Below are positions 6,856-57,368 of a stretch of 64,000 nt of DNA, piece by piece (position 1 is the stretch's first letter; the number at the start of each line of letters is the position of its first letter). The position numbers were made by a program, and so were the translations under genes. Below the pieces are notes generated by a model. It was not told the DNA's origin. It worked only from the letters and a program-made list of their open reading frames with translations, and made no database searches. This DNA is from Malacoraja senta (lineage: Eukaryota). The stretch is taken from contig CM075978.1 of NCBI GenBank assembly GCA_038087875.1, positions 179,986,001-180,050,000 of the forward strand, written 5' to 3'.

Positions 6856-6951
6856 AGTTATTCTTCAGTTTGCAGAATCCGACAATGACAGTCATAATGA
6901 ACAAAAATGCGATTACAACCGCCGAACGGACAGAACTCCAGATGACTGTTT
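6856..6951 (-). CDS. Gene A exon 4, transmembrane ETVIWSSVRSAVVIAFLFIMTVIVGFCKLKNN
   Basis: 96 nt, acceptor aacttgcag, donor CT|GTAAGT, phase 1 in and out; hydrophobic stretch with Arg, then basic stop-transfer residues. Confidence 0.85.
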
Positions 6952-9900
6952 CTGCAAGTTTAGAATGGCAGATACTGAATTCTACTTTGAGCCGACCATT
7001 GTTTGTTTTAAAGAATCTCTTTAGAATTTGGTGATTTGCTATCGCTCATAATTACATGCAAAAAACATTCTGCTTGAATCTGATATTAGAAACAACGTTG
7101 TCCCGAAGAGTGAGAATGAATAAATTGCCATCTGTACCGGATGCCGTAAATTACTTTAAGCGAGTTTAATTTCAGACGAATAAGTAGGGGGGAGGAGGAT
7201 GGGGGTGGAGTGGATATATTTCTTCACTTTTAATTGGAATGCAGCAGCACACAAAGCTCCAACGTCTTAGGGAAGTGCTGATTTGGTTGAGGTCCAAGGC
7301 AAATCTTCTTTCCCTTATGTACAGTATCAAGGTGTACTTTTTCCAGACACGCCTGCAGATCTTAAAGATAATGAGCTACGGTCATTATCATATGGTAAAT
7401 ACGCTATAGTAAGTCCCAGGGCGCCCTGTCCTCTAAAAAACGTTCAGTGATTGGCAATAAATCGCTCCCCATCATCGCCCCCCACATGCAGTTATTATAT
7501 TGAGTGAAACAGCACGGAAACCGGCCCTTGGCCCAGCACGTCTATGCCGATCAAAATACCTCACAATACCAGAATAGGAGTAATTGCTGAAACCCACCAT
7601 ACGGCGCTTGACCAGAAACAAGATATGAAACAGTTCCCTGCTTTAAATCCAAACAGGTTGGAAGGGACGACATTTTTTCTACACAGGATCACAAATCGGG
7701 ATGAATCCACAATGATAGGAATATGAATTCAATAAAGAGCTGCAAGTGGTTGTGTGTGGAGCAAAAATTAAAACCGCCCCCTCTAATTCGTTACCACAAT
7801 TTGAAAACAACAAATTTTGCGCGAATTTTCTGGAGAACTGAGTCGATACTATTTACGAGGATAGTATTATTTGCATTCCAATTTACATGATTTATCATCC
7901 ACAAACACAGAATTGAATCGTAGGTTGCAAAACGTCATAGTGTTTTTAAGTCATACCTTTGAAAACGACGTGGAATTTGCGACTTTGGTGGGAGATATGA
8001 GACACCAGATAAACGTAAATGTTTCCATTCGGCTCCGACTGTGTCACGGGCAATGAAGTAGAAACTGCGTACAGCCCTTCAGTATTTTTCTGTTTAACGT
8101 TATTAGTCTCAGTTCTAACTGCGGTACCATGTTTATGCCATACAAGAGTTCACTCGGGTGAAACTCGGCCGTTTCACAGACGTGAAGGGATAAAGGGAAT
8201 AAAGGCAGTAGTTGTGTGGGAAATAACTGCAGATGCTGGTTTAAACCGAAGATAGACACAAAATGCTGGAGTAACTCAGAGGGACAGGCAACATCTCTGG
8301 ATAGAAGGAATGGATGACATTTCGGGCTGTGACCCTTCTTCAGACAGAGAGAAAGAAGTAGCTTCCGAGCCTATTGCCCCCTGGCTTGTGAGGGGAACTT
8401 TCTGACAATTAGCTGAATTCTAGAACTTTTTTAAAAGAGTCTCCAAAATGAAAGGGATGCACCAATTTTGGGCAGTTCCTAGACATCTGTCAGCAAATTC
8501 AGTAGCAGACACTAAACAATGGATGTAGTATGAGGCTACGGGAGAATGCGTAGTAACGAGCAGACAATGCAAAATATTTCGAGCGAAAATGAATGCCATC
8601 CCTTCACATTTCGACAGTTACCTGAAATAGCGGGTCATTCTGGGACCCGTTAGAGACAGTGTTTACGATGATAGGAATGGCATTTGTCATCCTTTTAAAA
8701 CAAACGTTGTCAATATCAACACACTCAGATGTCAATAATAAGTTATAAAATTATACGGTGTTTCAAGTCATACCTTGGTCAGGTTTGCGAAGGGCGTGCG
8801 TGGCAATGGCGGGTCTTTGGAGGGAGATGTGCATCACCAGACAAATGTAAATATTCCCGTTGGCCTCCGACTGCGTCATGGGTATTGAACTGGAAGCCGT
8901 GTACAGCCCTTCACTATTTTTCTGTTTAATGGTATCAGCCTTAGCTGTAACAGCAACGCTATTTTTATACCATATAACGGTTAGATCACCCGGGTGAAAC
9001 TCGGCCGTTTTACAGACAAGCGTTGTAGCTGCAGATGAATTGCTCTCGGATATCCAGTTAAACTTCAGTGGAGTTGGAAGGGCTGTGGGGCAGAGTGCGA
9101 AAATATCATATTACTGGGATGAAATTAAGCAAAGACAGTAGGAGCATCTGGTTTAGAAATCCACATATTTTACCCGATCCCTTCAAGACAGAAGTTAACG
9201 AATTATTGATATCTGTTACCTCATACAGCGGAGCGCAATAACCGCAGCGGAAAGTTAATTTTGTTTCAACTCAACAAGCGTTCAATGACATGAAATGTGG
9301 AATCTTTTGGAGGTACAATTTATATTGATTTATGCTGGATCGTATTTGAAGGTGTGATGATCTCTTGATTGAAAGCTATTGTTACCTGTTTTGAAAGACA
9401 TCTTATTTGCTATATTTTTAAAATATATTTTCGGCATAATAATATCCATTGAACGTCGTAAATTCAATAAAACGAGCATAAAATTATATGGTTAGCAGTT
9501 TTCACATAATTTCATTGGGCCTTTCTCTCTCTCTCACAAATCGGAACTCTAATATAGAAATATAAATCTTGTGCAATATTATCGGCTATTCTGCTCACTT
9601 TTGTCACTCACCACATACTGTTAGTTCTGACCCTCTTCCTTCTCCCCTAATTTCCCCCTGACGCATGACTACACAGCGATAGTTTCCCGAATCCTGGTAG
9701 GTCGTGTTCAGCAAATCAAAATATCCGCCTGCTCTATTTTTGAAGGTGAATCGCTTTCTGCCATCAGCGTCGCTTTGTATATATTCATTCTCCCCCTGTT
9801 TTCGCCAACGCACTTCGATTCCCGAACTGTCATACGTAAGTGGGATTATGCAGTGAAAGGTGACGTTTGCTCCCTTCAATATAACCTTTCGTTCTGGAAT

Positions 9901-10164
9901 TTGGGTAACGTGGATCGCAGTTTCTTCAGCAGCTGTTGGAAAAACGTTTAAGATTTGGTTAATTATATTCAATGTAGTACCAACTCTTTAGATAATACAT
10001 TGGCATGAAAAACAAAACTAACAAAGACAAATAGAACAAATAGTTTTCACCAGTTAAGCCAGGAATAGTTTGGGATATTTTGGCATTTAGATAAGTCTAT
10101 ACGAGATCGTTCAAGTACCTGTGCAAATAATCACGGAGAGAGACAGAACCAGGACCAGAAACAT
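6856..10164 (-). CDS. Gene A: VJ-C1-TM Ig-superfamily receptor, activating type (TM Arg). Join 10164-10119, 9932-9612, 9082-8774, 6951-6856; cytoplasmic exons unresolved
   Basis: Four exons with GT-AG boundaries, all phase 1, splice into an open frame: signal peptide, V domain, C1 domain and hydrophobic TM containing Arg. Confidence 0.9.
7957..8185 (-). pseudogene. Relic C1-set exon in gene A intron 3
   Basis: Translates to VCETAEFHPSEL / VWHKHG...KQKNTEGLYAVSTSLPVTQSEPNGNIYVYLVSHIS with a frameshift, second Cys changed to Tyr and 5' part missing; keeps donor AG|GTATGA. Confidence 0.85.
8215..8345 (-). mobile_element. Penelope-type tail fragment
   Basis: aaatgctggagtaactcag...cccttcttcagac. 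Confidence 0.6.
8774..9082 (-). CDS. Gene A exon 3, Ig C1-set domain
   Basis: 309 nt, acceptor cccacag, donor AG|GTATGA; [32 protein letters not shown] match C1-set motifs. Confidence 0.93.
9612..9932 (-). CDS. Gene A exon 2, Ig V-set domain with joined J-like strand
   Basis: 321 nt, acceptor ttccaacag, donor TG|GTGAGT; B-strand Cys (TFHC), Trp (VRWRK), [17 protein letters not shown]. Confidence 0.95.
10119..10164 (-). CDS. Gene A exon 1, signal peptide MFLVLVLSLSVIICT
   Basis: ATG at 10164, 46 nt, donor AG|GTACTT, phase 1; hydrophobic leader; 3 differences from the gene B leader. Confidence 0.9.
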
Positions 10165-10251
10165 TGCAGTTTTAACATTCCGAGCAAATCATTCAACTGA
10201 TGCCTCACTACGATATTCACTCTAAGCAATGGTTACTTTGAAATGTGTTGC

Positions 10252-10313
10252 GATGACGTTTGGCGCGTTTTCTTACGTGGGTAGGACCACACTTCGCATT
10301 CGCTGGTGAAGGA
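10252..10313 (-). promoter_or_regulatory. Putative proximal promoter motifs of gene A (CACGTAAG, AACGTCA CRE-like half sites)
   Basis: Motifs 90-150 nt upstream of the ATG are also retained upstream of gene B and of the diverged relic leader. Confidence 0.35.
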
Positions 10314-10959
10314 ACATAAGTAAGAGTGCAGCATGTATAGGTAACAAAATAATGTTTCGGGGGTGTTTTTTGCAGGGCTAAAGGAGGTTTTTAAAAATAA
10401 TTGTAGAATTTAGATCTTAGATTGCAATTAAACTAGGGAATTATCAGAATTATCAGAGTTGGGGAATCCCTAAATGCCAGAGATCAGGGCGAGATTACAA
10501 AGAGAGTGATGGACAATTTGCGCCGATAATTACAAATCGTGCAGTAAATTAATCAAGGGATTCCTGTTTTACTGGACATCGTTGTGATTGATCTCGCATG
10601 GGGTGATATATTATTTTGCCATAATCGCAAATATATCCAAGTACAACAACAGATGGAAATGACAAGTCAGAATAGTAGAACTAAAAGGTAAAAGAACGTC
10701 ATAGCCGAATGCATCAGGGCCATTAAAGCAGAGGGAGAATCGGTGTTGGGATCAAGATTCATATTTTGTTGCTGTTGGCACATATATTGTTCACTGCTCA
10801 TCTAGATGTCAAATTTAACACCGTGTAGAGTCTACTTCAGTTTTCGACAGCTATCGGGAAGAATCGCATTTAGCGGGAATCCAGTTAGCGAACATAAAGT
10901 GGTTTTATTTGCATAGTTTTAGATTTTAATTGCGTAGATCGTCATGGAATGCGAGAATA

Positions 10960-11250
10960 TCTGTGAGCCCATCAATATAACCACTCTCTCCGGAATTTGA
11001 ATCACGTGGTTTCTTCGGCACCTGCTGCAAAAGCGTACCCAATTTGATTGTTAATATTCAGCGTGGAATGGTACACTCCAGATACATTTTGGCATGATTC
11101 ATTAAACAGCAACATATGGAAAAAAATTCTTCGCGCGGTTGAACCAGTAATTGTTCTGAGTATTCTGGCATTTAAAATAGTTTCAAAGAAAATATAAGGA
11201 TACCTGTATAAAAAAATCATCGAGAGAGACAGGAGCTGGAAGAGAAACAT
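10960..11250 (-). pseudogene. Relic leader exon plus truncated V exon of a third paralogue
   Basis: Leader-like MFLFQLLSLSMIFLY (11250-11204, 47 nt, wrong phase); then GAEE..HVIQIPERVVILMG with a 7-nt deletion and stop relative to the functional V exon. Confidence 0.8.
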
Positions 11251-24039: not shown

Positions 24040-24400
24040 TCTGAAGATAGATACAAAATGCTGGAGTAACTCAGCGGGACAGGCAGCATTCTCCGGATAG
24101 AAGGGATGGGTGACTTTTCGGGTCGAGTCCCTTCTTCAGACAGAGTCAGGGAAGAGGGTAGAGTTCTGGATTAATGGAGATGCAGCTGCAGGAAAATGTA
24201 GAATGATTCATTGTTAGCTGAGGGGGAGGTGAAACGAGGCATACAATCAGTAAAATTTAATCAGGTGGACAGTGAAACTAGTCGGAGAGCTAGGATGGGG
24301 AGGGACGGAGAGAGAAGGAATGCAAGGGTTACTTGAAGCTAGAGAAATCAATATTCATATCGCTAGGTTGCATGTAATGTTCTCTGTAATTTTCACTGCC
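24040..24400 (-). mobile_element. Penelope-like 3' fragment
   Basis: Same tail as the 8215 and 63.4 kb copies. Confidence 0.6.
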
Positions 24401-24599: not shown

Positions 24600-26720
24600 T
24601 TTGTCTAGATATTTCTAGCAGTATCATTTTGAACACTTGCGGGTGGGCATTTGATGCATAGAGAGGCAGAACAAATGGGCTTAGTGGACAGGTAGTGATT
24701 CCGTTCAGGCGGAGGAGGTGGAGAGTACACAGTTCTAAACAGACCTCGAGAACTGAAAGTTACAACTTGTATGAGAATAAGGAGGACCAGGTATGTTCAT
24801 TAAAAACAGACAGGTGGGCAGAGGGGATGGGGTAGCTCTGTTGGTGAAGAATGAAATTCAGTCCGTTGCGAGGGGTGACATTGAATCAGGACAATCAGAA
24901 TCAGTTTGGATAGAATTGTAAGGGTAAAAATACCCTAATGGGAGTTATCCACAGACCCCAAACAGTAGCCTGGATATAGTGTGCAAGTTGAATCAAGAGT
25001 TAAAATTGGCATGTCGTAAAGGTAACGCTACGGTTGTTATGGGAGATTTCAACATGCACGTTGACTGGGAAAATCAAGTTGGTACTGGACCCCAAGAAAG
25101 GGAGTTTGTGGACTGCCTCCATGATGGATTCTTAGAGCAGCTTGTACTGGAGCCTACCAGGGAGAAGACAATTTTGGATTTAGTGTTGTGTAATGAACAG
25201 GATTTGATAAAGGGAACTCGATGTAAAGGAGCCATTAGGAGATAGTGACCATAATATGATAAGTATTAACCTACAATTTGAGAAGGAGAAGGGTAAATCG
25301 GAGGTGTCAGTATTACAGTTGAACAAATGGGACTTTGGAGCCATGAGGGAGGAGCTGGCCAAAGTTGATTAGAAAGATAACCTAGCAGGGATGACAGTGG
25401 AACAACAATGGCAGGTATCCAAGGGGAGTAAGGGGCGACCGTGGCTGACAAGGGACGTCAGGGACAGTATAAAAATAAAAGTGAAGTATAACATAACAAA
25501 GATGAGCGGAAAGCCAGAGGATTGGGTAACTTTTGAAGAACAACAGAAGGTAACTAAAAAGGCAATATGAGGAGAATAATGAGGTACGAAGGTAAGCTAG
25601 CCAAGAATATAAAGGAGAATAGTAGAAGCTTCTTTAGGTATGTGAAAAGGAAAAAATAGTTAAGATCAAAATTGGACCCTTGAAGACTGAAAAGGGCAAA
25701 TTTATTATGGGGATCAAGGAAATGGCAGACGAGTTGAACAGGTACTTTGGATCCGACTTCACTGAGGAAGACACAAACAATCTCCCTAATGTAGCAGTCG
25801 CCAGAGGATCTAGGGTGATGGAGGAACGGAAGGAAATCCACATTAGGCAGGAAATTGTGCTGGGTAGACTGATGGGACTGAAGGTTGCTAAATCCCCAGG
25901 GCCTGATGGTCTGCATCCCAGGGTACTTAAGGAAGTGGTTCTAGAAATCATGGACGCATTGGTGATCATTTTCCGATGTTCTATAGAATCAGGATCAGTT
26001 CCTGTGGATTGGAGGCTGTCTAATGTTATCCCACTTTTTAAGAAAGGTGGGAGAGAGAAAACAGGGAATTATAAATCAGTTAGCCTGACATCAGTGGTGG
26101 GGAAGATGCTGGAGGCAATTATAAAAGATGAAATGGCGGCACATTTGGATAGCAGTAGCAGGATCAGTCCGAGTCAGCACAAATTTACGAAGGGGAAATC
26201 ATGCTTGCCTAATCTTCTGGAATTTTTTGAGAATGTAACTAGGAAAATGGACAAGGGAGAGCCAGTGGATGTGGTGTACATGGACTTTCAGAAAGCATTT
26301 GATAAGGTCCCACATAGGAGATTAGTAGGGAAAATTAGAGCACATGGTATTGGGGGTATGGTGCTGACATGGATAGAAAATTGGTTGGCAGACAGGTAAC
26401 AAAGAGTAGGGATTAACAGGTCCCTTTCAGAATGGCATGCAGTGACTAGTCGGGTACTGCAAGGCTCTGTGCTGGGACCGTAGCTATTTACAATATATAT
26501 TAATGATTTAGATGATGGGATTAAAAGTAACATTAGCAAATTTGCAGATGACAAAGCTGGGTGGCAGTGTGAACTGTGAGGAGGATGCTATGAGGATGCA
26601 AGGTGACTTGGACAGGTTGGGTGAGTGGGCAGATGCATGGCAGATGCAAATTAATGTGGATACATGTGAGGTTATCCACTTTGGTGGCAAAAACAGGAAG
26701 GCAGCTTATTATCTAATTTA
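24600..26720 (+). mobile_element. CR1 LINE (endonuclease plus RT), degenerate
   Basis: VVMGDFN, KSPGPDGLHPRVLKE, YMDFQKAFDKVPH. Confidence 0.9.
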
Positions 26721-29700
26721 TAAAAAGCTGGATATAATTACTGGAAGATCTGTTCCTTTTTGGGCTGCGTAGGACGACTCCTACTTACCTGTGTAATAAT
26801 GGCAAGGGAAAGTTGGACATTGGAAAAGTTAGAAATTGCCATTGCAACCTCCATTCAATATGATCATGGCTGATCATCTCAAATCAGTACACCATATCCC
26901 TTGATTCCTTAAGCCCTAAGAGCTAAATCGAACTCTCTCTTGAAAACATCGAGTGAATTGGTCTCCACTGCCTTCTGTGGCAGGGAATTGCACAGATTCA
27001 CAACTCTCTGGGATCAAATGTTTTCCCTCATCTCAGTCCTAAATGGCCGACCCCTAATTTTTAAACTGTGACCCCTATTTCTGGACACCCTCAAAATCAG
27101 GGACATTTTTCCTGAATCAAGCCTGTCCAATCATTTAAGAATTCTATATGTTTCTATAAGATACCCTCCCATCCTTCTAAATTCCAGTGAATACAAGCCC
27201 AGTCAACCCATTCTTTCATCATATGTCATCCCCGCAATCCCAGGAATTAACCTTGTGAACCTACACTGCACTCCCTCAATAGCAAGAATGTCCTTCCTCA
27301 AATCTGGAGACCAAAACTGCACACAATACTCCAAGTGTAGTCTCACTATTAACCTGGTGAACATACGCTGCACTTCCTCAACAGCAATAATGTCCTTCCT
27401 CAGATTAGGAGACCAGATCTGCATACAATTCTCCAAGTGCGGTCTCACCAGGGCCCTGTACATCGGCAGGCGGATGTCCTTGCTCCTAAAATCTAATCCT
27501 CTTGCAATGAAGGCCAACATGCCATTAGCTTTCTTCATTGTATCTGCTCTATCTGCATGCTTACTTTCAGTGACTGATGTACAAGCACACTCATGTCTCG
27601 TTGCACCTCCCCTTTTCCTAATCTGAGACCATCCAGATAATAATCTGCCTTTGTGTTCTTGCCACCAAAGTGGACAACCTCACATTTATCCACATTATAC
27701 TGAATCTGCCATGCAACGTACACAGACTCACCCAACCTATTCAAGTCACCCTGCAGCCTCATACCATCCTCCTCGCAGCTCACACTGCCACCCAGCTTTG
27801 TGTCATCCACAAACCTGGAGATGTTACATTTAATTCCCTCATCTAACTCGTTAATATATATTGTAAATTACAGGTGTGCCAGTACCAAGCCTTGCAGCAC
27901 CCCACTAGTGACTGCCTGCATTCTGAAAAGTTACCATTAATTCCTACTCTTTACTCCCTGTCTGCCAACCAGTTGTCTATGGTGTCAAAGAGGGAATTGG
28001 AGGGCCATCTGAAATCAACGTACACAGCCAACCAAAGATTTGAGCAGAGGGGGATACCTCCAGACATGCCCCCATTCCTCAACCAGAACACCAGTTGGAC
28101 GACAGCCTCCCAAGGTGCAGCGAAGTCGAGAAGCCCGTAAGGAAGGCAAGGGCAACTTCAGCTCCAGGACCAAATGGAGTTCCATACCGGCTGTACAAAA
28201 ATGCTCCAAATGTTCTACGGTTCCTATGGAGGCAAATGAAGGTAGCATGAAAAAAGCAAACCATCCCAAAAGCATGGCGAAGAGCAGGGGGAGTGGTGAT
28301 CCGCAAGGAAAAAGATGTCTCAAACATCGACGTATTCCGGCAAATCAATCTCTTGAATGTTGAAGGGAAGATCTTCTTTAGCATTGTTGCTCAAAGGATG
28401 ATAACCTACCTGAAAGAACAACTTGATTGACACGTTGGTACAGAAAGCTGGTATACCAGGCTTCTCTTGATGCTTAGAACACACAAGCATGATATGGCAT
28501 CAAATCCAGCCTGCAAGAAGGGAAGGAAGAGATCTGCACGTCTTATTCCTGGACCTAGCCAATGCTTTTGGATCGGTTCCCCATTCTCTCCTCTGGACAG
28601 CCTTCGATTTCTTCCATGTGCCAAAGACCATTACAAACCTGGTCAGAAACTACTTCCAAGATTTACAATTCTGTATTACAACAGAATACACAACATCATG
28701 GCAATCACTGGAAGTGGGAATAATGGCAGGTTGCACCATCTCCCCGCTAGCCTTCACCATGGCGATAGAAGTGATCATCCGAGCTTCCAAGTGGGTCATA
28801 GGAGGAGAGCGGCTGCAGTCTGGGCAGCGGCTACCTCCCATTCTCACCGACATGGATGACATGACCACCCTGACCTCAACCATTGCATGTACCAAGCGCC
28901 TGCTGGAAAAGCTTCATGCGAACATAACATGGGCCCGGATGAAGTTGAAACCCAGCAAATTCAGGAGCATATCCATCATCAGAGGAAATATCGTAGACAA
29001 GCGATTCCACATTGATGAAACACCTATTCCGATGTGTTAGAGCTGCCGGTCAAGAGTTTAGGATGGTACAATGCAAGCCTCAAAGACTCAGACCAGTGTG
29101 ACCAACTGAGGGAAAAACCCATCAAAGGCCTTGCTAGCATAGACAAGACCTCGCTTCCTGGTAAGCTGAAACTGTGGTGCCTGCAGTTATGGATTGCTCC
29201 CCCGTCTGATGTGGGCCTCTGATGGTTTACGAGATCCCCATCACCAAAGTCGAGAAGTTGGAGAGGACAGTCAGTTCATACATCAAGAAGTGGCTTGGAC
29301 TCCCACGTTAGCCTCAGCAATATTGGCTTGTTTGGACACAGTGCTCTGGAACTGCCTGTCTCTAGCCTCATATAAGAATACAAATGCACCAAAGTGAGGC
29401 TGGACATGACCCTGACCGAATCTCAAGATGATGCGGTACGAGCGGCTGCTCCCAGACTGGCAACTGGGAGGAAGTGGACCCCATCGGAGGCTGTACAGCA
29501 AGCAAAATCTGCTCTCAGGCATGGAGACATTGTAGGACAGGTGCAGCAGGGAAGAGGTGGGATTGGACTCGGGACAAGTCGACCCACATGGTACACGGCA
29601 ACATCCACCCAGAGAAGAAAGCTGGTAGTTGCTGAGGTCCGTCAGCAAGAGGAGGCAGAGAGATGCGCAAAGGCAGTCTCACAGTCCAAACAGGGTCAGT

Positions 29701-40800: not shown

Positions 40801-40995
40801 CCACGTCGGTTGACACCTGGCTCGCCTATGGCATTTCCCACCAGGCCTGCCAGCTCGCCGGTCGTGTCCCCACTCCCTTCCCCTGTCTTTTCTCCCGCGA
40901 AAGGAGGTGAGGCTGTCTCCTACCGCACGAGAGCTGGACGGGTTTGCAAGCCACCTGTTAGATATGGCGATTTTGTATAATCTTGCTGCCGGGAA

Positions 40996-47727: not shown

Positions 47728-48872
47728 TCCATGTCAATACTCTACCACCAATACCATGTGCTCTAATTTTGCACACTAAACTCTTGTGTGAGTCCTTGTC
47801 TTTTTGAAAGTCCAGATACACCACATCCACTCGCTCTCCCTTATCCATTCTACTTGTCATATCCTCGACAAAATCCAAAAGATTAGTCAAACATTATATC
47901 CCCTTCATAAATCCATGCTGACTTTGATCGATCCTGTCACTGCTTTCCAAATGTGCTGCTGTTACACCTTTAATAATCGACTCAAGCATCTTCCCCACTA
48001 CCTGGCATATAATTCCCCATTTTCTCTCTCTCTCCTTTCTTAAAACGTGGAGTTATGTTAGCTACCCTCCAGTCCACGGGAACGGATCCAGAGTCTATCG
48101 AACACTGGAAAATGATCACCAATGCATCCATGATTTTTAGGGCCACCTCCTTGAGTATGGGATGCAGACCATCTGGCCCTGGGAGAATAAAGAGGGAAGA
48201 TTAGACTTTATTGCCTTCCATCACAGTGAGGAATGTAGGGAATCCCCTGTGGTGGATGTATATGTTGACTTTTATGTAGTTGTGTGTCTTGTTCCTTTTT
48301 CTAGTATGGCTGTATGGTAAACCGAGTTTCACTGTACATTAATTGGTACTCGTGACCATAAAATACATTTGAAACCTTTGAAACCTTTTATCTGCCTTTA
48401 GTCCCAACAGTTTACATCACACCATTTCCTCACTAATGTGGATTCCCTTCAGTTCCTCCCTCCCGCTAGATCCTCAGTCTCCCAGTATATCTCCAGTATT
48501 TAAGAAACTTGATCAAGGCATCCTTGGGCTCACAGATATTCTCGCATTCCATGACTATCCACGCAATTAAAATCTAAAATTATGCAAATAAAACCACTAA
48601 ATGCGATTCTTCCCGATAGCTGTCGAAAGCTGAAGTAGACTCTACTCGGTGTTAAATTTGACATCTAGATGAGCAGTGGACAATATCGGTGTCAACAGCA
48701 ACAAAATCTGAATCTTGATCGCAGCACCGATTCTTCCTCTGCTTTAATGGCCCTGATGCATTCGGCTATGACGTTCTTTTACCTTTTAGTTCTACTATTC
48801 GGACTTGTCATTTCCATCTGTTGTTGTACTTGGATATAGTTGTGATGATGGCAATATATTGTATAACCCCAT

Positions 48873-49014
48873 CTTCTTCTTCTTCTTTCGTGTGGCGTGC
48901 ACAGCCTAAAGTTGTTGGACAACTTGTTCTATTTGATCTTCCGTTTGTGCACGTCGAGTTGATTGCATTAGTCGAAACAGGGCAGACCACGTGAAGGTTG
49001 CAATCTTCCACCCC
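48873..49014 (-). mobile_element. 142-bp SINE-like insertion with (GAA)n tail
   Basis: Absent from the gene A arm; flanked by gtataaccccat / gtataatcccat (11 of 12 match). Confidence 0.8.
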
Positions 49015-49370: not shown

Positions 49371-49457
49371 GCACCACATTTCAAAGTAACCATTGCTTAA
49401 AGTGAATATCGTAGTGAGGCATCAGTTGAATGATTTTCTCCGAATGTTAAAACTGCA

Positions 49458-49503
49458 ATGTTTCTGGTCCCGATTCTGTCTCTCTCCATGATTATTTGCA
49501 CAG
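49458..49503 (+). CDS. Gene B exon 1, signal peptide [15 protein letters not shown]
   Basis: ATG at 49458, donor AG|GTACTT, phase 1. Confidence 0.9.
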
Positions 49504-52500
49504 GTACTTGAACGATCTCATATAGACTTATCTAAATGCCGAAATATCCAAAACTATTCCTGGCTTAACTGATGAAATCTATTTGTTCTATTTGTCTGTT
49601 AGTTTTGTTTTTCATGCCAATGTATTATCAAAAGAGTTGGTTCTACGTTGAATATAATTAACCAAATCTTAAACGTTTTTCCAACAGCTGCTGAAGAAAC
49701 TGCGATCCACGTTACCCAAATTCCAGAACGAAAGGTTATATTGAAGGGAGCAAACGTCACCTTTCACTGCATAATCCCACTTACGTATGACATTTCGGGA
49801 ATCGAAGTGCGTTGGCGAAAACAGGGGGAGAATGAATATATACAAAGCGACGCTGGTGGCAGAAAGCGATTCAGCGTCAAAAATAGAGCAGGCGGATATT
49901 TTGATTTGCTGAACACGACCTACCAGGATTCGGGAAACTATCGCTGTATAGTAATGCGTCAGGGGGAAATTAGGGGAGAAGGAAGAGGGTCAGAACTAAC
50001 AGTATGTGGTGAGTGACAAAAGTGAGCAGAATACCTGAGAATATTGCACAAGATTTATATTTCTATATTAGAGTTCCGATTTCTGAGAGAGAAGGGCCCA
50101 ATGAAATTATGTGAAAACCCATACAATTTGATGCTCGTTTTAGTGAATGTACAACGTTCAATATTATTATGCCGAAAATATATGTTAAAAATACAGCAAA
50201 TAAGATGTATTTCAAAACAGGTAACAATAGCTTTCAATCAAGAGATCGTCACACCTTCAAATACGATCCAGCATAAATCACTATAAATTGCACCTCCAAA
50301 AGATTCCACGTTTCATGTCATTGAACACTGGTTGAGTTGAAACAGAATTAACTTTCCGCGGCGGTTCTTGCGCTCCGCTGTATGATGTGACAGATATCAA
50401 TAATTCGTTAACTTCTGTCTTGAAGGGACCGGGTAAAATAGGTGGATTTCTAAACAAGCTGGGACTGGCAGAGGTTTGCTTCCTTCTCCTACTGTCTTTG
50501 TTTAATTTCATCCCAGTAATATGATATTTTCGTACTCTGCCCCACAGCCCTTCCAACTCCACTGAAGCTTAACTGGATATCCGAGAGCAATTCATCTGCA
50601 GCTACAACGCTTGTCTGTAAAACGGCTGAGTTTCACCCGGGTGATCTAACCGTTATATGGTATAAAAATAGCGTTGCTGTTACAACTAAGGCTGATACCA
50701 TTAAACAGAAAAATAGTGAAGGGCTGTACACGGCTTCCAGTTCAATACCCATGACGCAGTCGGAGGCCAACGGGAATATTTACATTTGTCTGGTGATGCA
50801 CATCTCCCTCCAAAGACCCGCCATTGCCACGCACGCCCTTCGCAAACCTGACCAAGGTATGACTTGAAACACCGTATAATTTTAAACTTATTATTGAATG
50901 CGTTTCTTGATGTTGACAAAGTCNNNNNNNNNNNNNNNNNNNNNNNNNNNNNNNNNNNNNNNNNNNNNNNNNNNNNNNNNNNNNNNNNNNNNNNNNNNNN
51001 NNNNNNNNNNNNNNNNNNNNNNNNNNNNNNNNNNNNNNNNNNNNNNNNNNNNNNNNNNNNNNNNNTCTATTCTAACGGGTCCCAGAAAAACTCATTATTT
51101 CTGGTAACTCTGGAAGTATGAATATGAGATGGAAGGGATGGTATTTATTTTCCCTCTAAACATTTTGCGTCGTTTGCTCATTCTCCCGAGGCTTCATACT
51201 AAATTTATTGTTTAGTTTACATTGCCGGATTTCGTGACAGATGTCGAGGAACGTTACGTCGTTTCTTTGTTCTGGAGCCTACCCCTAAAATAGTGCATCT
51301 CTTTCATTTCGGAGATTCCAGAATTGAGTTGTCAGGATGTTTCCTTTCCAAGCCATGGGCAATGGGCTCGGAAGCTCCCTCCTTTATTTTACACGGCCTC
51401 ATCCTTTTCACTAATATCGTACTAAATTATGGATTCACAGAAATAATGGCAATGTATATTTATATAACTGGAAGGTACACAAAAATGCTGGAGAAACTCA
51501 GCGGGTGCAGCAGCATCTATGGAGCGAAGGAAATAGGCGACGTTTCGGGCCGAAACCCTTCTTCAGACTGATAGGGGGTGGGGAACAAAAAGGAAAAAAG
51601 GAAAAAGGCGGAGGAGGAGCCCGAGGGCTGGGGGAGGGGAGGAGACAACCAGAGGGCTGATGAAGGGGAGGGGACAGCAAGGGCTAGCAGAATTGGGAGA
51701 ATTCAATGTTCAAGCCCCCAGGATGTAGACTGCCCAAGCGGAATATGAGGTGCATTTCCTCCAATTTACGGTGTTGCTCGCTGTGGCCATGGAGGAGACC
51801 CAGGACAGAGAGGTCAGATACGGAATGGGAGGGGGAGTTGAAGTGCTGAGCCACCGGGAGGTCAGGTTGGTTATCCCCGGATGCTCGAGAAAATGTGTTT
51901 TCCGCCTTCAATAATCGTTGCAATCTCTGTGTGAATGGACAACATATGTGGAACTGTGGCTATGATGGTGGAGTGCGAAATGTGCCTACTTTCATTACCC
52001 TCGCTGATGAAAGTAGCCGGTTTGGTAGTTACTGTCGAACTAATCTTGGCGAGCCCTCTATTTTTATCTGCTTCACACGCACTATCGCGATGCAGGATCT
52101 AATAAACAATAACATAAGCATGGTCTGAAGAAGGGTCGAAACGAAATGAAAGGGTCGAAACGAAGGGTTGACCCGAAACGTCGCCCATTCCTTCTTTCCA
52201 GAGATGCTGCCTGTCCCACTGAGTTACTCCAGCATTTTGTGTCTAACTTCGATTAAAACCAGCATCTGCAGTTCTTTCCTACACAATAAAATGAGCATGA
52301 TGTACTGATCCTTGCTACTGCAGATCAGCGAAGGATATTAAATATAGTGTTTTACTCAATTCAAGCGAATTGTTGGTCAGAGTATGGGGCGCCATAGTTT
52401 ATTCTATTGCCAAGCCAAGTCAAGTAAAAGAAACATTACTCCCTTCCAGCAATACGTATTCACCTGTCTTTAAATAATGCTCAGTACACCGGAGACTGAT

Positions 52501-55500
52501 ACGGTGCAAATTATTCACGGCACGCAAATTACTCAGGTCGCATGTTACATTTTGCCAGAAAAAATAATTACGGATGTCAGAATAAAAAATACTTTAAAAA
52601 TTAAATGCAAATGTGATTATCTTTTTACAGTTATCTCGCGCTATTCCGTGTAGTTATCGTAAGCTTATAAATCAGTTCAGTCACAAGTAATTCAAATAAC
52701 TATTCTTTTAACGTATCAAAAGTACCCAAAGTGGAATTCATTATTTTTCCTCATCTTTCAGAACTCGATAACAAATATTTCTATATCTGGGCTTCTGGAA
52801 GCGCGGTCGGTGGAATCGGCATTTTGGTGTTTGTATTTATCATTGTCCTGAGGTGCCGTTCGACAAATAAAAGCAAGTATTATGCTCACCGATGTGTTTT
52901 CTGAGAACCTAGACAACACCGCAGATAATGAATACAATTTCTAAATGATAGAGCTGCTATGCAATTTTGCAGGAATTCGAATTGCACCGGACATGACCGG
53001 TAATTCAGTATTTATAATTTAATAGTGATCACAGAAGAAATAAATATAAATATTATTCTGCTTATTTGCAAGAGTATGTTTCAATTTTACATATGGAAAA
53101 GCGAAATCTAGATACATTTCAGGTGCAACTGGTTTGAGCAGGATGGTATTAGTGCCCAGTCGAGAGGAAATAGCGGATGCTTGGCGGGCTCACATTTTTA
53201 ACTTAAATATGATATGTCAAAATAATTTCCAACCACAAATGCAAACTTTATGCTGTTCATTAAGGAATTGTAGAGAACTATCCTCATTTGCTACACATGA
53301 AAATCCAATTCTCACCATGATCTCTTATTGATAAACTTTCTAACATTGTTTCAAAACTTCCCATTTGGTTGAATCTGCAAGAGTCCTCCAATTACCCACC
53401 TCCCCCCGCCACAGTTCATTCAAAACTTTTCTCGATACGATAAGGAACGACACATTATAGACAAGGGCAATCGCAATCGCAATCGAAGTCAAAGGGGATA
53501 GTATTTAGACGCAGCAGTGTGAAGCGTTGTGAACACCTTTTTTCGAAAAGATATTTGAAGTAAAATCTCATGTGACGGATGCAGTATAGATCTCAATGTA
53601 ATCGTTGGATTATGACATGCTGAATAACACGTTAATGTTGCTTAGATATATAATCTTGTAGTTTTATCTGATTTAAAATAAATAATGTAGTAATCGCACA
53701 AAAATATCGTTGAATATTAAGAAACGTGGAAACTAGAGGGAGACAGAAAGGCCTGGATAGAGGGGATGTGTAGAGGATGTATCCACTTGTGGGAGAGTCT
53801 AGGACCAGAGACCATAGCCTCGGACTAAAATGACGTACATTTAGAAAGAAAGGGAGGAGGAATTTCTGCAGTCAGGATGGTGAATCCGTGGAAGTCATTG
53901 CCACAGAAGACTATGAAGGCCAAGTGAATGGATATGTTTAATGGCGGAGAGTGATAGATTCTTGATTAGTACGGGTGTCAAAGGTTATGGGGAGAAAGCA
54001 GGAGAATGGGGTTGAGAGGGAAAGACAGGTTAGCCATAATTGAATGGCGGAGTAGACTTGATCGGGCGAATGGCTTAATTCTGCTCTTATAATGTATTAA
54101 TATATGAACAGTAAACGCTGCATTTGCGTGTGACAGTTGCATTCTGCATTTGAAGTAAGATAACGTTTCTCACTTAAATAACGCCTGTCTTAAATAACTC
54201 AATTATTCACGAGTTTATATTAAATTAATCATATCATACTAGAAACATAATATTGTGTTTCCTCTCTCCGTGAAATTCATTGTCCTCGTTAAAGAAAGAA
54301 CGGTTCTTATAATTGCACCAACCCTCAAAGTCTTGCATCGTTTAACGATGTTCTCGGATATGAATTTAACCCGAATTTCAATGAATGAAATCATCCTTTG
54401 ATATTGCTTGATGCTTTGGATGGGCAATTTCATTGAAGAGTCCGCGAAGCTCCAAAAATGCTCTTCGTCACTTTTACAATTCACAATGTTCATGCATATA
54501 CATAATCGAATATATGTGTGACTGTGTGCATTGCCCGTCATTTTTGCTGAATGGATAGCACATTGGCTCCATGGAAGGAAGCAGAGGGTGATAGTGGAAG
54601 GTTTCTTCTCAGAATGGAGGCCAGTGACTAGTGGTGTGCCACAGGGTTCGGTGCTGGGCCCGTTATTGTTTGTCATCTACATCAATGATTTTGGAGAACA
54701 TACAGGGCCAGATTAGCAAGTTTGCTGATGATACAAAAGTTAGCGGTTTTGCAGCAGGATCTGGATCGATTGGAATTTATTCTTGATGGAATTTAATACA
54801 GAGAAGTGTGAGGTGTTACATTTTGGGACGTCGAACAAGGGCATGACATACACGGTAAATGGTAGGCCTCTGGCTAGTGTTGTAGAGCAGAGGGATCTAG
54901 GAGTACAAGTGCATGGTTCCTTGAAGGTCGAGTCACAAGTAGATAAGGTGGTCAAAAAGGCTTTTGCCACTGGCCTTCATCAGTCAGAGTATTGAGTATA
55001 GAAGTTGGGAGGTCATGTTGCAGTTGTATAAGAAGTTGGTGAGACCGCATTTAGAATATTGTATTCAGTTCTTGGCACCATATTATAGAAAAGATATTGT
55101 CAAGCTTGAAAGGGTTCAGAAAAGATTTACGAGGATGTTGCCAGGACTAAAGGGTGTGAGCTATAGGGAGAGGTTAAGCAGTCTGGGTCTCTATTCCATG
55201 GAGCGTAGGAGGATGAGGGGAGATAGAGGTATATAAAATCATGAGAGGAATAGATCGGGTAGATGCACATTCTTTTACCCAGAGTAGGGGAATCGAGCAT
55301 CCGAGGACGTAGGTTCAAGGTGAAGGGGAAAAGATTTAATAGGAATCCCAGGGGTAACTTTTTCACACAGAGGGTGGTGGGTGTATGGAACAAGCTGCCA
55401 GAGGAGGTCATTGAGGCGGGGACTATCCCATCGTTTAAGAAACAGTTGGACAGGTAACTGGATAGGATAGGTTTGGAGGGTTATGGATCAAGCGCAGACA

Positions 55501-57368
55501 AGTGGTAGCTGGAACATTATTGGCCAGTGTGGACGAGTTGGGCCGAAGGGCCTGTTTCCACAGTGTATCACTCTATGACTGTATGACTATTTAATCTCAT
55601 TGCTCATCGCTTTCCCTGCATACAATGATAGTCTCTTGTTTTACTGTTACCATAAAAAAAGTATTAATAGGACACGGGAAAATGTTTTACCGTTATTTAT
55701 AATTTAATTTCATTAACTTTTAGAGCCAAGAAGTACCGGGGGCCATGAAGAATCGGTATGCATTTATGTATATATACATATATATTACATTTGAGAAAAC
55801 GGTTGAAGCATCTATAAATAAAGTTGTAAAACAAGTATTCTGTCAGAACTATTTCGCAAAAGTATCAATCGCTATCGCGGATCTGTTAAATTGGGTTTAA
55901 CATTAATTTGACGGCAGTTGCGACGTTTGTGTAAGTGGTTATAGGAAGAGACAAATTAAATTGATTAATTAATTCCGCATATACGTAAATAATAACTACA
56001 TTCATCGATCCAAGTTACGTTTGAACTCAGTAATTCCACCTAGTGATGCTGAATGACAGTGAAACCCATCAAGTTTAAGTTCAGTAGATAAATTCTACTT
56101 AAAACCCATACAGGTCTTCTAGTTTTAGATTTATAAACTATATCTTTTGTATGTGTTTGGAATTTACTCCATTGCGCTTACTGGCAAATGCGCAAACAAC
56201 GATAATGGCACGTGCAGTCATGTAAATTATTTTCTTTCTGATCCATGCAGGTTGAAGCGAACAACACCCTGACTTATTCTGCTGTAGATATGAGCAATTC
56301 CAAAAGGAAATTGAGACAGAAAAGCGAAGAGGAGACAGCCTATGCACGAGTAAGATTTTGCAGCACATAAAGAAAACATAGAACGCGGCGCAGAAAATAG
56401 GTGTAAAAGAGCCATATCCTAATATCATAAATCATGAGACATAGAGCCCATCGAGTCTGCTCTGTCATTGGATCATGGCTGATTTATTTTTCCCACTCAA
56501 CCTCATTCTGCTGCCATATCTCCGTAATCTTTGACAACCTTACTAATCAAGAATATTGTTAAATCTTTGCTTAGAAAATATCCAATAAATTGTCCGCCAC
56601 TTCCGTCAATGAATCTTCTATCCAAGAATCAAGAGTCAATAATGTTTTATTGTCATATGTCCCACCCAGGCTAGTACCTTGCCTCTAACACCATGAACTC
56701 CTATCTTGTTCAGCAGCTTCATGTGGGTCCTGAAAATCCAAGTAAACGTGGTCCATGGTCTCTCCTTTGTCCATCTCCCCTTAAAACTATGCTGACTTCG
56801 GCCTGTTTGACAATATTTTAAGTACCCCGAAACCTCATCATTCGTAATGTACACTAATATCAGACCAACCACTGAATGTCTGGGATTATAGGCACAAGTG
56901 ACTGCAGATGCTGGAATCCTGTCCAAAAAACCCGAAGCTTTTTGCATCCGAGGAAGGAAAAATCAGGTGCCATTTTAATCCAAAGAAGGGTCGAGATCCA
57001 TCACATAGTTTCTTATTTTTCTTCCACAGATGTTGCCAGGCCTACAGTGTTCGTTCCTCCGGCACGTTGTCTATTTACTCAATATCTGCGTTTGTCCCAA
57101 CGTTGGTAGTGTGGCGCGTCTAAAGTTGTTCCGATGTTTTTGATATCTGACTTGATCCGCAGGCCACAAAGTGGTTCAACAATGACATATTTTGCAACCG
57201 TTGGTTTTTCAGGTAAAACAAGGGGCCGCCCGGGAAGTACTTACATACGCATCTGTGGAATTGTCTCAACCCGGGAATGCTGGTAAAGTTAAAGCCAGGG
57301 ATAAGATCACGGAATATGCAGCGCTGCAGACGGCAAATCCACGAAGAGTAAAAGAAGACGGAAAGTAA
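49458..57368 (+). CDS. Gene B: VJ-C1-TM Ig-superfamily receptor, inhibitory type (SIRPalpha-like tail), 366 aa. Join 49458-49503, 49688-50008, 50548-50856, 52762-52872, 52973-52999, 55724-55755, 56251-56349, 57213-57368
   Basis: Exon lengths 46+321+309+111+27+32+99+156 = 1101 nt give one open frame ending in TAA; all acceptors AG, donors GT except one GC. Confidence 0.85.
49688..50008 (+). CDS. Gene B exon 2, Ig V-set domain with joined J-like strand
   Basis: Same motifs as gene A; 6 nt differences in 321. Confidence 0.95.
50548..50856 (+). CDS. Gene B exon 3, Ig C1-set domain
   Basis: [10 protein letters not shown]...[20 protein letters not shown]...[10 protein letters not shown]...PDQ; 3 nt differences from gene A in 309. 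Confidence 0.93.
50924..51064. other. Assembly gap (141 N) in gene B intron 3
   Basis: Run of N. Confidence 1.
51470..51880 (-). mobile_element. Penelope-like fragment
   Basis: [17 protein letters not shown]...[24 protein letters not shown]. Confidence 0.8.
52762..52872 (+). CDS. Gene B exon 4, uncharged transmembrane [37 protein letters not shown]
   Basis: Acceptor tcatctttcag; GC donor AA|GCAAGTATTATGCT aligns with the gene A donor CT|GTAAGTATTATGCT. Confidence 0.85.
52973..52999 (+). CDS. Gene B exon 5 (27 nt, RIRIAPDMT)
   Basis: Acceptor ttttgcag, donor CG|GTAATT, phase 1 to 1. Confidence 0.7.
53720..54090 (+). mobile_element. CR1 3' fragment in a gene B intron
   Basis: gagtctaggaccagag...ggttatggggagaaagcagg...gaatggc 3' UTR. 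Confidence 0.75.
54530..55590 (+). mobile_element. CR1 3' fragment in a gene B intron (sense)
   Basis: [24 protein letters not shown], (ctatgact) tail. Confidence 0.88.
55724..55755 (+). CDS. Gene B exon 6 (32 nt, [11 protein letters not shown])
   Basis: Acceptor taacttttag, donor CG|GTATGC; supplies the phase 1-to-0 change needed to read the ITIM exons. Confidence 0.7.
56251..56349 (+). CDS. Gene B exon 7, ITIM plus ITSM: [33 protein letters not shown]
   Basis: Acceptor ttctttctgatccatgcag, donor GA|GTAAGA, 99 nt, phase 0 to 0. Confidence 0.85.
57213..57368 (+). CDS. Gene B terminal exon, ITIM plus ITSM-like: [51 protein letters not shown]
   Basis: Acceptor ggtttttcag, phase 0, stop TAA at 57366-57368. 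Confidence 0.85.
   Translation, partial: VKQGAAREVLTYASVELSQPGNAGKVKARDKITEYAALQTANPRRVKEDGK

What the first reader, a model, noticed from the sequence alone, without database searches (positions are those of the whole stretch)
9612..9932. Non-rearranging V exon with germline-joined J motif followed by a true C1 domain
Seen: one exon holds the whole V domain including the G-strand GxGS-x-L-x-V motif and ends directly in a splice donor; I found no RSS beside it; the next exon is C1-set. Established: C1-set domains are largely restricted to Ig, TCR, MHC, tapasin, SIRP and B7H6-type genes, and VJ-C1 genes have been proposed as relatives of the pre-RAG antigen-receptor ancestor. Inference: these genes are candidates for that class in the oldest vertebrate lineage with RAG-based immunity.
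Basis: partly seen in the sequence, partly recalled or inferred. Interest (0 to 1): 0.7.

Follow-up and report, generated by a model that had tools for sequence, protein, structure and literature searches.

The report
Paired SIRP-like V-C1 skate receptors
Two neighbouring skate genes encode surface immune receptors built like half an antigen receptor (a ready-joined V domain plus one antibody-type constant domain), one apparently wired to switch cells on and one off.

Summary
On the minus strand, 9612-9932 is one phase 1-1 exon. It encodes a whole V-like domain, including a conserved GxGSxLxV G strand, and ends at a GTGAGT donor. No RSS lies beside it or anywhere in the window. The next exon (8774-9082) is a true C1-set domain by Pfam (1.2e-13) and by fold.

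The gene (A) goes on to a transmembrane exon carrying an Arg, then a short tail. An inverted copy (gene B, 49.4-57.4 kb) has a 97% identical ectodomain, an uncharged transmembrane segment and an ITIM/ITSM tail. Together they look like an activating/inhibitory receptor pair.

At least 82 clusters (at 50% identity) of this family turned up, named only from sharks, rays and chimaera. NCBI names them inconsistently (SIRP-alpha-like, SIRP-beta-like, tapasin-related-like and others). I found no paper on the family.

SIRP-alpha is the closest solved V-C1 protein, by a small margin; orthology is not shown. The V domain lacks a C'' strand, does not nest in IgL or TCR, and is no closer to Ig/TCR V than to other V or I-set domains. 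Relatives are not on the MHC chromosome of sawfish or catshark.

This scan had already noted the same family elsewhere in this genome.

The parts
10119..10164 (-). Gene A leader exon (ATG at 10164; signal peptide MFLVLVLSLSVIICT; phase-1 donor G|GTACTT)
   Evidence: Sequence; coordinates; the junction matches the L. erinacea model P0158.
9612..9932 (-). Gene A V(J) exon: whole V-like domain with the [11 protein letters not shown] strand, ending at a GTGAGT donor. This is the finding.
   Evidence: no RSS.
8774..9082 (-). Gene A C1-set exon (phase 1-1)
   Evidence: Pfam C1-set 1.2e-13. The fold matches MHC II beta2/alpha2, UrIg2 and Ig C.
7957..8180 (-). Relic of a second C1 exon in gene A. It is 78% identical in DNA to the C1 exon. 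Its 5' end is replaced by an interspersed repeat, it carries a frameshift near 8146-8149, and the second Cys is now Tyr.
6856..6951 (-). Gene A stalk/transmembrane exon (ETVIWSSVRSAVVIAFLFIMTVIVGFCKLKNN) with an Arg in the outer part of the helix. The donor is T|GTAAGT. If the donor is not used, the frame runs on to a stop at 6788.
   Evidence: The same Arg position with a short tail is seen in at least 13 family members.
49458..49503 (+). Gene B leader exon
49688..50008 (+). Gene B V(J) exon, 98.1% identical in DNA to gene A's (5 non-synonymous and 1 synonymous codon differences)
50548..50856 (+). Gene B C1-set exon, 99.0% identical in DNA to gene A's
52762..52872 (+). Gene B stalk/transmembrane exon, with no charged residue in the helix and a GC donor (A|GCAAGT)
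56251..56349 (+). Gene B cytoplasmic exon with LTYSAV (ITIM) and TAYARV (ITSM-type)
   Evidence: tblastn with the sawfish homologue P0004; sequence and splice sites.
57213..57368 (+). Gene B last coding exon with LTYASV (ITIM) and TEYAAL, then the stop codon
8707..10971 (.). Arm of the inverted duplication shared with 48525-50919: promoter side, leader, V and C1. Identity is 92% in the flanks, 94-96% in the introns and 98-99% in the V and C1 exons.

Best explanation
The V exon belongs to gene A, an intact-looking, non-rearranging immunoglobulin-superfamily receptor gene of a skate. Its plan is split leader, one V(J) exon, one C1-set exon, then a transmembrane exon with an Arg and a short tail.

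Gene B lies about 40 kb away in inverted orientation. It has almost the same ectodomain, but an uncharged transmembrane helix and a tail with two ITIMs and two ITSM-type tyrosines.

Shown here: the exon anatomy, the domain types, the absence of RSS, membership of a large family that I saw named only in cartilaginous fish, and the family-wide split into 'Arg in the membrane, short tail' and 'long ITIM tail' forms.

Inferred: the two genes work as a paired receptor. B would recruit SHP-type phosphatases through its phosphorylated ITIMs and damp the cell. A would bind the same or a similar ligand through a nearly identical V-C1 ectodomain, and signal through an ITAM adaptor docked on the membrane Arg (FcR-gamma/CD3-zeta type, judged from the position of the Arg). 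The ectodomains are kept alike by recent duplication or gene conversion.

The closest known system in architecture, signalling layout and profile score is SIRP-alpha/SIRP-beta. Whether the family is orthologous to SIRP is left open.
For: - Exon structure and splice phases.
- Junctions confirmed by the 91% identical L. erinacea model P0158 and by the same exon plan in C. milii.
- Domain types: Pfam V-set/Ig_3 and C1-set; AlphaFold models with fold matches.
- No RSS.
- Family: 166 proteins at E<=1e-3, and 82 of the best 150 are family members, most with V directly followed by C1. The named members are all chondrichthyan and carry SIRP-alpha-like or SIRP-beta-like names among others.
- Gene B tail exons found by homology, with LTYSAV, TAYARV, LTYASV and TEYAAL.
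- Tail classes among the family members checked: 28 with ITIM tails of 45-150 residues, 13 with a membrane Arg and a tail under 45 residues.
- Activating/inhibitory pairs with near-identical ectodomains recur across the tree, for example P0027/P0030 and P0161/P0166.
- A and B are 202/209 identical over V-C1, while their transmembrane exons are only 67/117 identical in DNA.
- SIRP-alpha (2wng) ranks 4th of 177,635 PDB sequences for the V-C1 profile. It gives the best single collinear V+C1 envelope (61.2 bits, profile 3-193), and its second C1 scores 41.3 bits. The comparison figures are 56.5 bits for a lambda light chain and 47.8 for UrIg2.
Against:
- Gene A's 3' end is unresolved: the tail could be read-through or reach an undetected exon.
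- A small exon of gene B between 52872 and 56251 was not located, and an assembly gap (50924-51065) follows B's C1 exon.
- The SIRP affinity is modest. SIRP V is not among the best V-only matches. The family has one C1 where SIRP has two. The activating form carries Arg where SIRP-beta is said to carry Lys (from memory, not checked here).
- The V exon differences between A and B are 5 non-synonymous to 1 synonymous. That could mean diversifying selection, or relaxed constraint on one copy.
Confidence: 0.8

Rival explanations
1. One reading: the gene is a surviving close relative of the pre-RAG antigen-receptor ancestor, a VJ-C1 relic in the sense of UrIg/UrIg2. Its V would then be specifically related to the V exon that the RAG transposon invaded.
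For: It has an unsplit VJ exon with a split leader plus a true C1 domain. UrIg2 is among the best C1 matches by sequence and by fold. The architecture is shared by chimaera and skate, so it is old.
Against: The V is no closer to Ig/TCR V than to PD-L1, CD79b, TMIGD2 or I-set domains, at 20-26% identity. It lacks the C'' strand that Ig/TCR V domains have. The family is a large, rapidly duplicating paired-receptor family with ITIM tails. In catshark the contig is also larger than every MHC-paralogon chromosome listed except possibly chr4.
Confidence: 0.1
2. The family is the true cartilaginous-fish orthologue of tetrapod SIRP, not merely SIRP-like.
For: NCBI's pipeline names many members SIRP-alpha-like or SIRP-beta-like. 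SIRP-alpha gives the best collinear V-C1 profile match and the best-scoring single C1 domains in the PDB. A skate member (P0027) has V-C1-C1, and gene A keeps the relic of a second C1. The inhibitory tail has four tyrosines alternating xTYAxL and TEYAxxQ, which resembles what I recall of SIRP-alpha's tail (from memory, not tested).
Against: The margin over Ig light chain and UrIg2 is small (61 against 56 and 48 bits). No SIRP appeared in either word-indexed profile search: the full-length one found an IgE heavy chain as its only outside hit, and the V-only one found TMIGD2 at E=2.5. The same family also receives tapasin-related, CD276, Ig lambda and NCR3-like names. Synteny was not tested.
Confidence: 0.3
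3. A secondarily germline-joined Ig light chain or TCR gene, a kind of gene reported in sharks (from memory).
For: The V-J-C1 order with a split leader resembles a germline-joined IgL cluster. One family member is auto-named 'immunoglobulin lambda-1 light chain-like'.
Against: There is no RSS or remnant. The V is short and lacks C''. None of the 68 non-family proteins among the 150 best V matches has V directly followed by C1. The genes have transmembrane exons with ITIM tails or a membrane Arg. The same unsplit exon is present in the chimaera.
Confidence: 0.01
4. Gene A is a decaying duplicate, an untranscribed or non-functional copy next to the working inhibitory gene B.
For: It carries a dead second C1 exon. 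Its 3' end is unresolved. A third leader plus a truncated V fragment lies just upstream. The differences from B in the V exon are mostly non-synonymous. There are no expression data.
Against: All four coding exons are open, with consensus splice sites in matching phases. The V and C1 exons are more conserved between A and B than the introns are (98-99% against 94-96%). The Arg-bearing short-tail form is a conserved class across sharks and rays.
Confidence: 0.15

Closest known systems
SIRP family (SIRP-alpha inhibitory, SIRP-beta activating; PDB 2wng, 4i2x)
   Same: Non-rearranging V domain with a J-like G strand in one exon, followed by C1-set domain(s). Paired inhibitory (multi-tyrosine ITIM tail) and activating (basic residue in the membrane, short tail) members with near-identical ectodomains. 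Best collinear V-C1 profile match in the PDB. Many members carry NCBI SIRP-like names.
   Different: One C1 domain instead of two, although a relic of a second sits in gene A and one skate relative has two. The V lacks a C'' strand. The membrane residue is Arg near the outer leaflet, where SIRP-beta is said to have Lys (from memory). Sequence affinity is only marginally better than to Ig or UrIg2. Ligand and synteny are unknown.
UrIg / UrIg2 (non-rearranging elasmobranch VJ-C1 genes; PMC12227049; PDB 9dmx)
   Same: Unsplit VJ exon, split leader and C1-set constant domains, in cartilaginous fish. UrIg2 is among the best C1 matches.
   Different: UrIg2 has up to 9-11 C domains in sharks, and its recombinant form is a disulfide-linked dimer with an Fc-like C2-C3. 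UrIg lies in the MHC and UrIg2 in the Ig/TCR complex. Here there is one C1, ITIM or membrane-Arg signalling, and many copies per genome. Relatives are not on the MHC chromosome.
NKp30 (NCR3)
   Same: Non-rearranging VJ-type domain. The activating form's Arg near the outer end of the membrane helix also resembles NKp30 (from memory). A V-only isoform of a sawfish family member is auto-named NCR3-like.
   Different: NKp30 has no C1 domain (from memory). The genes annotated NCR3 in elasmobranchs sit in the MHC class III region beside AIF1 and PRRC2A. This family does not.
IgNAR V domain and NCAM Ig1 (structural type of the V domain only)
   Same: These are the best structural matches to the V model: Z 14.5, rmsd 1.8-1.9 A over 97-98 of 106 residues, and the top Foldseek hit. 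The model itself has no C'' strand, and short, C''-less V domains are what I recall of IgNAR V and I-set domains.
   Different: Only 18-26% identity. Z is barely above that for VH and TCR V (13.6-14.2). IgNAR V rearranges and NCAM is an adhesion molecule. No specific kinship is shown.
Teleost NITRs and other paired IgSF receptors (KIR, PILR, LILR)
   Same: Works alike: multigene clusters of activating (charged membrane residue) and inhibitory (ITIM) members that share ectodomains. NITRs also have a V with a J-like motif (from memory).
   Different: As far as I recall, none of these has a C1-set domain. No sequence relationship was seen in any search here.

Membership tests
Pfam C1-set (PF07654) | Score over the curated cut-off and a C1-type fold | tested here: met
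   51.6 bits against a cut-off of 21, E 1.2e-13, with C2-set_2 only 19.8 bits. The top 50 PDB hits and top 30 Swiss-Prot fold hits are all proteins with C1-set domains.
Pfam V-set (PF07686) | Score over the cut-off; A' strand, G-strand GxG bulge, and C' and C'' strands | tested here: inconclusive
   V-set scores 29.5 bits (cut-off 26), but Ig_3 scores 34 and I-set 25.7, both also over their cut-offs. The model has the A' strand and a break in the G strand at the GxG motif, only a one-residue bridge for C', and no C''. Best fold matches are IgNAR V and NCAM Ig1.
SIRP | N-terminal V domain with a J-like G strand encoded in one exon | tested here: met
SIRP | Two membrane-proximal C1-set domains | tested here: not met
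   There is one intact C1 exon in A and one in B. A has only a dead relic of a second. A gap follows B's C1 exon. One skate relative (P0027) does have two.
SIRP | Inhibitory member with a multi-tyrosine ITIM tail, paired with an activating member that has a basic membrane residue and a short tail | tested here: met
   Gene B has LTYSAV, TAYARV, LTYASV and TEYAAL. Gene A has a membrane Arg. The split is family-wide.
SIRP | Sequence closer to SIRP than to any other V-C1 protein | tested here: inconclusive
   SIRP-alpha gives the best collinear envelope, 61.2 bits against 56.5 (lambda light chain) and 47.8 (UrIg2). No SIRP appeared in the V-only or word-indexed searches.
SIRP | CD47 binding; conserved synteny with the SIRP locus | not testable with these tools
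   The window holds only the two genes and retroelement debris. There is no binding assay.
Rearranging IgL/TCR genes (including germline-joined copies) | RSS beside V or J, or their remnants | tested here: not met
   0 sites in 64 kb, and none at relaxed settings beside either V exon.
Rearranging IgL/TCR genes (including germline-joined copies) | V nests among Ig/TCR V families | tested here: not met
   Family members score 63 bits or more, non-family hits 50 bits or less, and no non-family hit has V followed by C1. Identity to TCR and Ig V is 20-26%.
UrIg/UrIg2 | VJ exon with split leader followed by several C1 domains | tested here: not met
   The VJ exon and split leader are present, but there is only one C1 domain, with ITIM or membrane-Arg signalling. 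UrIg2 features are taken from PMC12227049.
UrIg/UrIg2 and NKp30 | Location in the MHC or in the Ig/TCR complex | tested here: inconclusive
   This cannot be read from the window. Relatives sit on contigs of 53.95 Mb (sawfish) and 198.79 Mb (catshark). The MHC chromosomes end at about 19.8 and 163.4 Mb, so they are not on the MHC chromosome. Other paralogons are not excluded in sawfish.

The most novel reading that the evidence does not exclude
The family would be an ancient third lineage of non-rearranging VJ-C1 genes, beside UrIg and UrIg2. Its short, C''-less V domain would be the nearest non-rearranging relative of the IgNAR / NAR-TCR V domain, the cartilaginous-fish V whose origin is unexplained. 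IgNAR V is the best structural match (Z 14.5, 98 of 106 residues) and the best single-domain V chain in the sequence-profile search (37.6 bits). The margins over TCR V, VH and NCAM are small.
Probability: 0.06. Interest if true: 0.75.

Novelty: new member of a known kind. Interest (0 to 1): 0.48.

Why it matters
C1-set domains occur in very few gene families, nearly all tied to adaptive immunity. A large, old family of non-rearranging VJ-C1 receptors in sharks, rays and chimaeras is therefore useful for comparison. It shows that the V(J)-C1 module was already in use for germline-encoded activating/inhibitory signalling in cartilaginous fish, alongside Ig, TCR, UrIg and UrIg2.

If the family proves orthologous to SIRP, that receptor system would date to the base of jawed vertebrates. 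In practice, databases name these genes inconsistently (SIRP-like, tapasin-related-like, CD276, Ig lambda-like, NCR3-like), and I found no paper describing them. They deserve a proper name and a phylogeny.

The single exon in the finding is one ordinary member of that family.

Tried and rejected
- Single-sequence PDB searches of the V exon gave only weak hits to I-set domains, TCR and IgNAR V, with nothing family-specific.
- Ranking PDB chains by whole-chain score is confounded by chains with many domains. I therefore read per-domain envelopes instead.
- The only non-chondrichthyan hit of the full-length profile search (P0175) turned out to be a peccary IgE heavy-chain constant region, not SIRP.
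- A V-only profile search among short proteins found only family members, plus TMIGD2 at E=2.5.
- I could not assemble a curated reference set (SIRP, TCR, IgL, NKp30, UrIg) as tool-held sequences. In that run my script mis-spliced gene B by one base, so B's branch length there is an artefact.
- The first run of segment identities used wrong leader coordinates; one search is the corrected one.
- Literature searches for SIRP or signal-regulatory protein together with elasmobranch, Callorhinchus or cartilaginous fish found nothing relevant. The UrIg 2023 and B7H6/NKp30 2012 papers are not held.
- The catshark locus DNA could not be fetched because the file was too large.
No read evidence was obtained.
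Full report
**What is in the sequence.**
The finding lies on the minus strand. A 46-nt leader exon (10119-10164) starts with ATG, encodes a hydrophobic signal peptide and ends ...ACAG|GTACTT in phase 1.

After a 186-nt intron comes the exon in question, 9612-9932. It has the acceptor ccaacag|, is 321 nt long, is phase 1 at both ends, and ends ...GTATGTG|GTGAGT. It encodes an entire Ig domain with the canonical Cys27, Trp42 and DSGNYRC (Cys86), and a G strand reading [10 protein letters not shown].

The next exon downstream (8774-9082) has the acceptor ccccacag| and the donor CCAAG|GTATGA. It is also phase 1-1, so the reading frame runs ...LTVC-A-LPTPLK... across the splice. The NCBI model of the Leucoraja erinacea orthologue (P0158) is 91% identical over 209 residues and has exactly these two junctions. 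I take this as independent support for the splice predictions.

**Domain types.**
The V exon passes the Pfam cut-offs for Ig_3 (34 bits), V-set (29.5 bits, cut-off 26) and I-set (25.7 bits). The second exon hits C1-set at 1.2e-13 (51.6 bits, cut-off 21), far above C2-set_2 at 19.8 bits.

AlphaFold models were built on family alignments. The V model has pLDDT 87.8 and shows strands A, A', B, C, D, E, F and G. The G strand is broken at the GxG motif, C' is only a one-residue bridge, and there is no C'' strand. Only 59 residues separate the two cysteines. Its best structural neighbours are IgNAR V domains and NCAM Ig1 (Z 14.5, rmsd 1.8-1.9 A over 97-98 of 106 residues). CD79b, TCR V-alpha, VH, PD-1 and SIRP-alpha V follow closely at Z 13.6-14.2.

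The C1 model has pLDDT 77. It matches MHC class II beta2 and alpha2, UrIg2, Ig constant domains and B7-H6, all of which carry C1-set domains.

The 'V domain' is a V-like domain of the short, C''-less kind.

**No rearrangement signals.**
A scan for a heptamer (CAC fixed, at most 1 mismatch), a 12- or 23-bp spacer (plus or minus 1) and a nonamer (at most 2 mismatches) found nothing on either strand in 64 kb, against 0.6 expected from shuffles. A relaxed scan found nothing next to either V exon.

The J-like motif is part of the V exon in the chimaera Callorhinchus milii as well. Locus L001 has the same plan: leader, a single VJ exon, C1, transmembrane and cytoplasmic exons. The unsplit state is therefore ancestral for the family.

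**The rest of the gene, and its twin.**
Downstream of C1, gene A has a dead relic of a second C1 exon (7957-8180). It is 78% identical in DNA to the C1 exon. Its 5' part is replaced by an interspersed repeat, it carries a frameshift, and the second Cys is now Tyr.

Next comes a transmembrane exon (6856-6951) encoding ETVIWSSVRSAVV...GFCKLKNN, with an Arg in the outer part of the helix, followed by a short tail.

An inverted copy, gene B, lies on the plus strand:
- leader 49458-49503
- V 49688-50008
- C1 50548-50856
- an uncharged transmembrane exon 52762-52872
- two cytoplasmic exons, 56251-56349 and 57213-57368

The cytoplasmic exons were found with the sawfish homologue P0004. They carry LTYSAV, TAYARV, LTYASV and TEYAAL, that is two ITIMs and two ITSM-type motifs.

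The inverted arms (8707-10971 against 50919-48525) are 92% identical in the flanks, 94-96% in the introns, and 98.1% and 99.0% in the V and C1 exons. The two ectodomains are 202/209 identical. The transmembrane exons share only 67 of 117 aligned bases. This is the pattern of an activating/inhibitory receptor pair whose ligand-binding part is kept alike.

**The family.**
An exhaustive HMMER search of 1.84 billion representatives with the V exon gave 166 proteins at E<=1e-3. Of the best 150, 82 are family members, scoring 63-154 bits against the family's V profile. Most have a C1 domain directly after the V. The other 68 are multi-Ig proteins scoring 50 bits or less, and none of them has V followed by C1. 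So no Ig or TCR chain is among the best 150 matches.

All named members come from cartilaginous fishes: Pristis, Mobula, Hemitrygon, Hypanus, Leucoraja, Amblyraja, Heterodontus, Heptranchias, Scyliorhinus, Mustelus, Chiloscyllium and Callorhinchus. They carry inconsistent automatic names:
- 'tyrosine-protein phosphatase non-receptor type substrate 1-like' (SIRP-alpha)
- 'signal-regulatory protein beta-1-like'
- 'tapasin-related protein-like'
- 'CD276 antigen homolog'
- 'immunoglobulin lambda-1 light chain-like'

Among the members checked, 28 have long ITIM-bearing tails, and 13 have an Arg at the same place in the membrane helix together with a tail under 45 residues. In a maximum-likelihood tree the Arg forms are scattered, needing 13 changes for 14 rows. 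They often sit next to an ITIM form with a nearly identical ectodomain, for example P0027/P0030 and P0161/P0166. Paired signalling is therefore a property of the family, not an accident of this window.

**Closest known family.**
A profile of the V-C1 part of 16 members was run against all PDB sequences. SIRP-alpha (2wng) ranked 4th of 177,635. It is the only top hit aligned collinearly over both domains (profile 3-193, 61.2 bits), and its second C1 scores 41.3 bits. For comparison, the lambda-type V-C stretch of 2rcj chain C scores 56.5 bits, UrIg2 scores 47.8, and individual Ig C domains score 18-32. SIRP-gamma is also in the top 60.

The margin is small. SIRP V is not prominent in the V-only searches. 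The family has one C1 where SIRP has two. The word-indexed profile searches returned no SIRP.

My conclusion is 'SIRP-like in architecture and signalling layout, SIRP the nearest solved relative, orthology open'. I found no paper describing the family. The literature on non-rearranging VJ-C1 genes in elasmobranchs concerns UrIg and UrIg2 (PMC12227049, PMC10751288).

**The evolutionary reading.**
Neither occurred: the V does not nest in IgL or TCR, and the second domain is C1. But nothing specific links this V to the Ig/TCR V lineage either.

On linkage, sawfish and catshark family members lie on contigs of 53.95 Mb and 198.79 Mb. The supplementary tables of PMC10751288 show the sawfish MHC chromosome 34 ending near 19.8 Mb and the catshark MHC chromosome 13 near 163.4 Mb. 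No 'non-receptor type substrate' gene is listed in those supplementary tables, which cover the sawfish chromosome to its end.

The catshark contig is larger than chromosome 13. Assuming chromosomes are numbered by decreasing size, it cannot be any of the listed paralogon chromosomes 16, 17, 21 or 25; only chromosome 4 remains possible. This argument rests on sizes and is not a mapping.

Earlier notes of this scan place tapasin and MHC genes on other pieces of this genome. I treat that as an unchecked lead.

**Limits.**
One small gene B exon and gene A's true 3' end are unresolved. An assembly gap (50924-51065) lies exactly where the arm homology stops.

**Earlier notes of this scan.**
The scan had already described the same family on this genome. 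A follow-up 5.19 Mb upstream reads 'Skate SIRP-like VJ-C1 inhibitory receptor gene'. First-reader notes cover a neighbour 21-24 kb before the window, the membrane Arg, and the identity gradient of the arms. My results were obtained independently and agree with them.

Noticed in passing
window 7957-8180 (-): Dead relic of a second C1 exon in gene A, 78% identical in DNA to the live C1 exon. Its 5' end is replaced by a repeat, it has a frameshift near 8146-8149, and the second Cys is now Tyr. This suggests the ancestor had V-C1-C1, as SIRP and the Amblyraja member P0027 do.
   Followed up: partly
window 11204-11250 and 10943-11067 (-): A third leader-like exon (MFLFQLLSLSMIFLYR, donor GTATCC) followed by a truncated, frameshifted 5' fragment of a V exon, just upstream of gene A. 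Part of the fragment (10898-10971) is also in the B arm (48525-48598). Probably a remnant of an older tandem copy.
   Followed up: partly
window 8766-8773 (-) and 50857-50867 (+): If the C1 donor is not spliced, both genes read on for three codons (G-M-T) to a stop. The L. erinacea NCBI model P0158 ends in exactly this way (…QGMT). A secreted V-C1 isoform is possible.
   Followed up: no
window 52873-52878 (+): Gene B's transmembrane exon ends at a GC donor (A|GCAAGT), where gene A has T|GTAAGT at the homologous place.
   Followed up: no
window 9613-9615 (-) and 50005-50007 (+): A Cys directly follows the J-like motif (LTVC) at the V/C1 boundary. It is present in 9 of the 20 family sequences aligned, with His, Tyr, Arg, Trp, Leu or Lys in the others. 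It could be a free or interchain cysteine.
   Followed up: no
window 9612-9932 vs 49688-50008: The two V exons differ at 6 codons, 5 of them non-synonymous (S/I, D/G, T/S, F/V, V/I). This could be diversifying selection on the binding domain or relaxed constraint on one copy. The counts are too small to decide.
   Followed up: partly
window 12000-48000: The roughly 36 kb between the two genes is retroelement debris. There are reverse-transcriptase ORFs at 25638-26396, 28471-29037 and 41255-41872, and an integrase ORF at 39742-40977 (Pfam). No other cellular gene was seen.
   Followed up: partly
window 50924-51065: A run of 142 N begins 5 bases after the inverted-arm homology ends (50919). The true extent of the duplication, and whether gene B has a second C1 relic, cannot be read.
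   Followed up: no
window 8212-8349: A short interspersed repeat with copies at 24043-24145, 51471-51568, 52172-52286 and 63396-63489. One copy replaced the 5' end of the relic C1 exon.
   Followed up: no
L001 23440-23562 (C. milii MU249845.1): A stop-interrupted C1-like fragment lies about 7 kb downstream of the C. milii family member P0160, consistent with a tandem cluster that includes pseudogenes.
   Followed up: no
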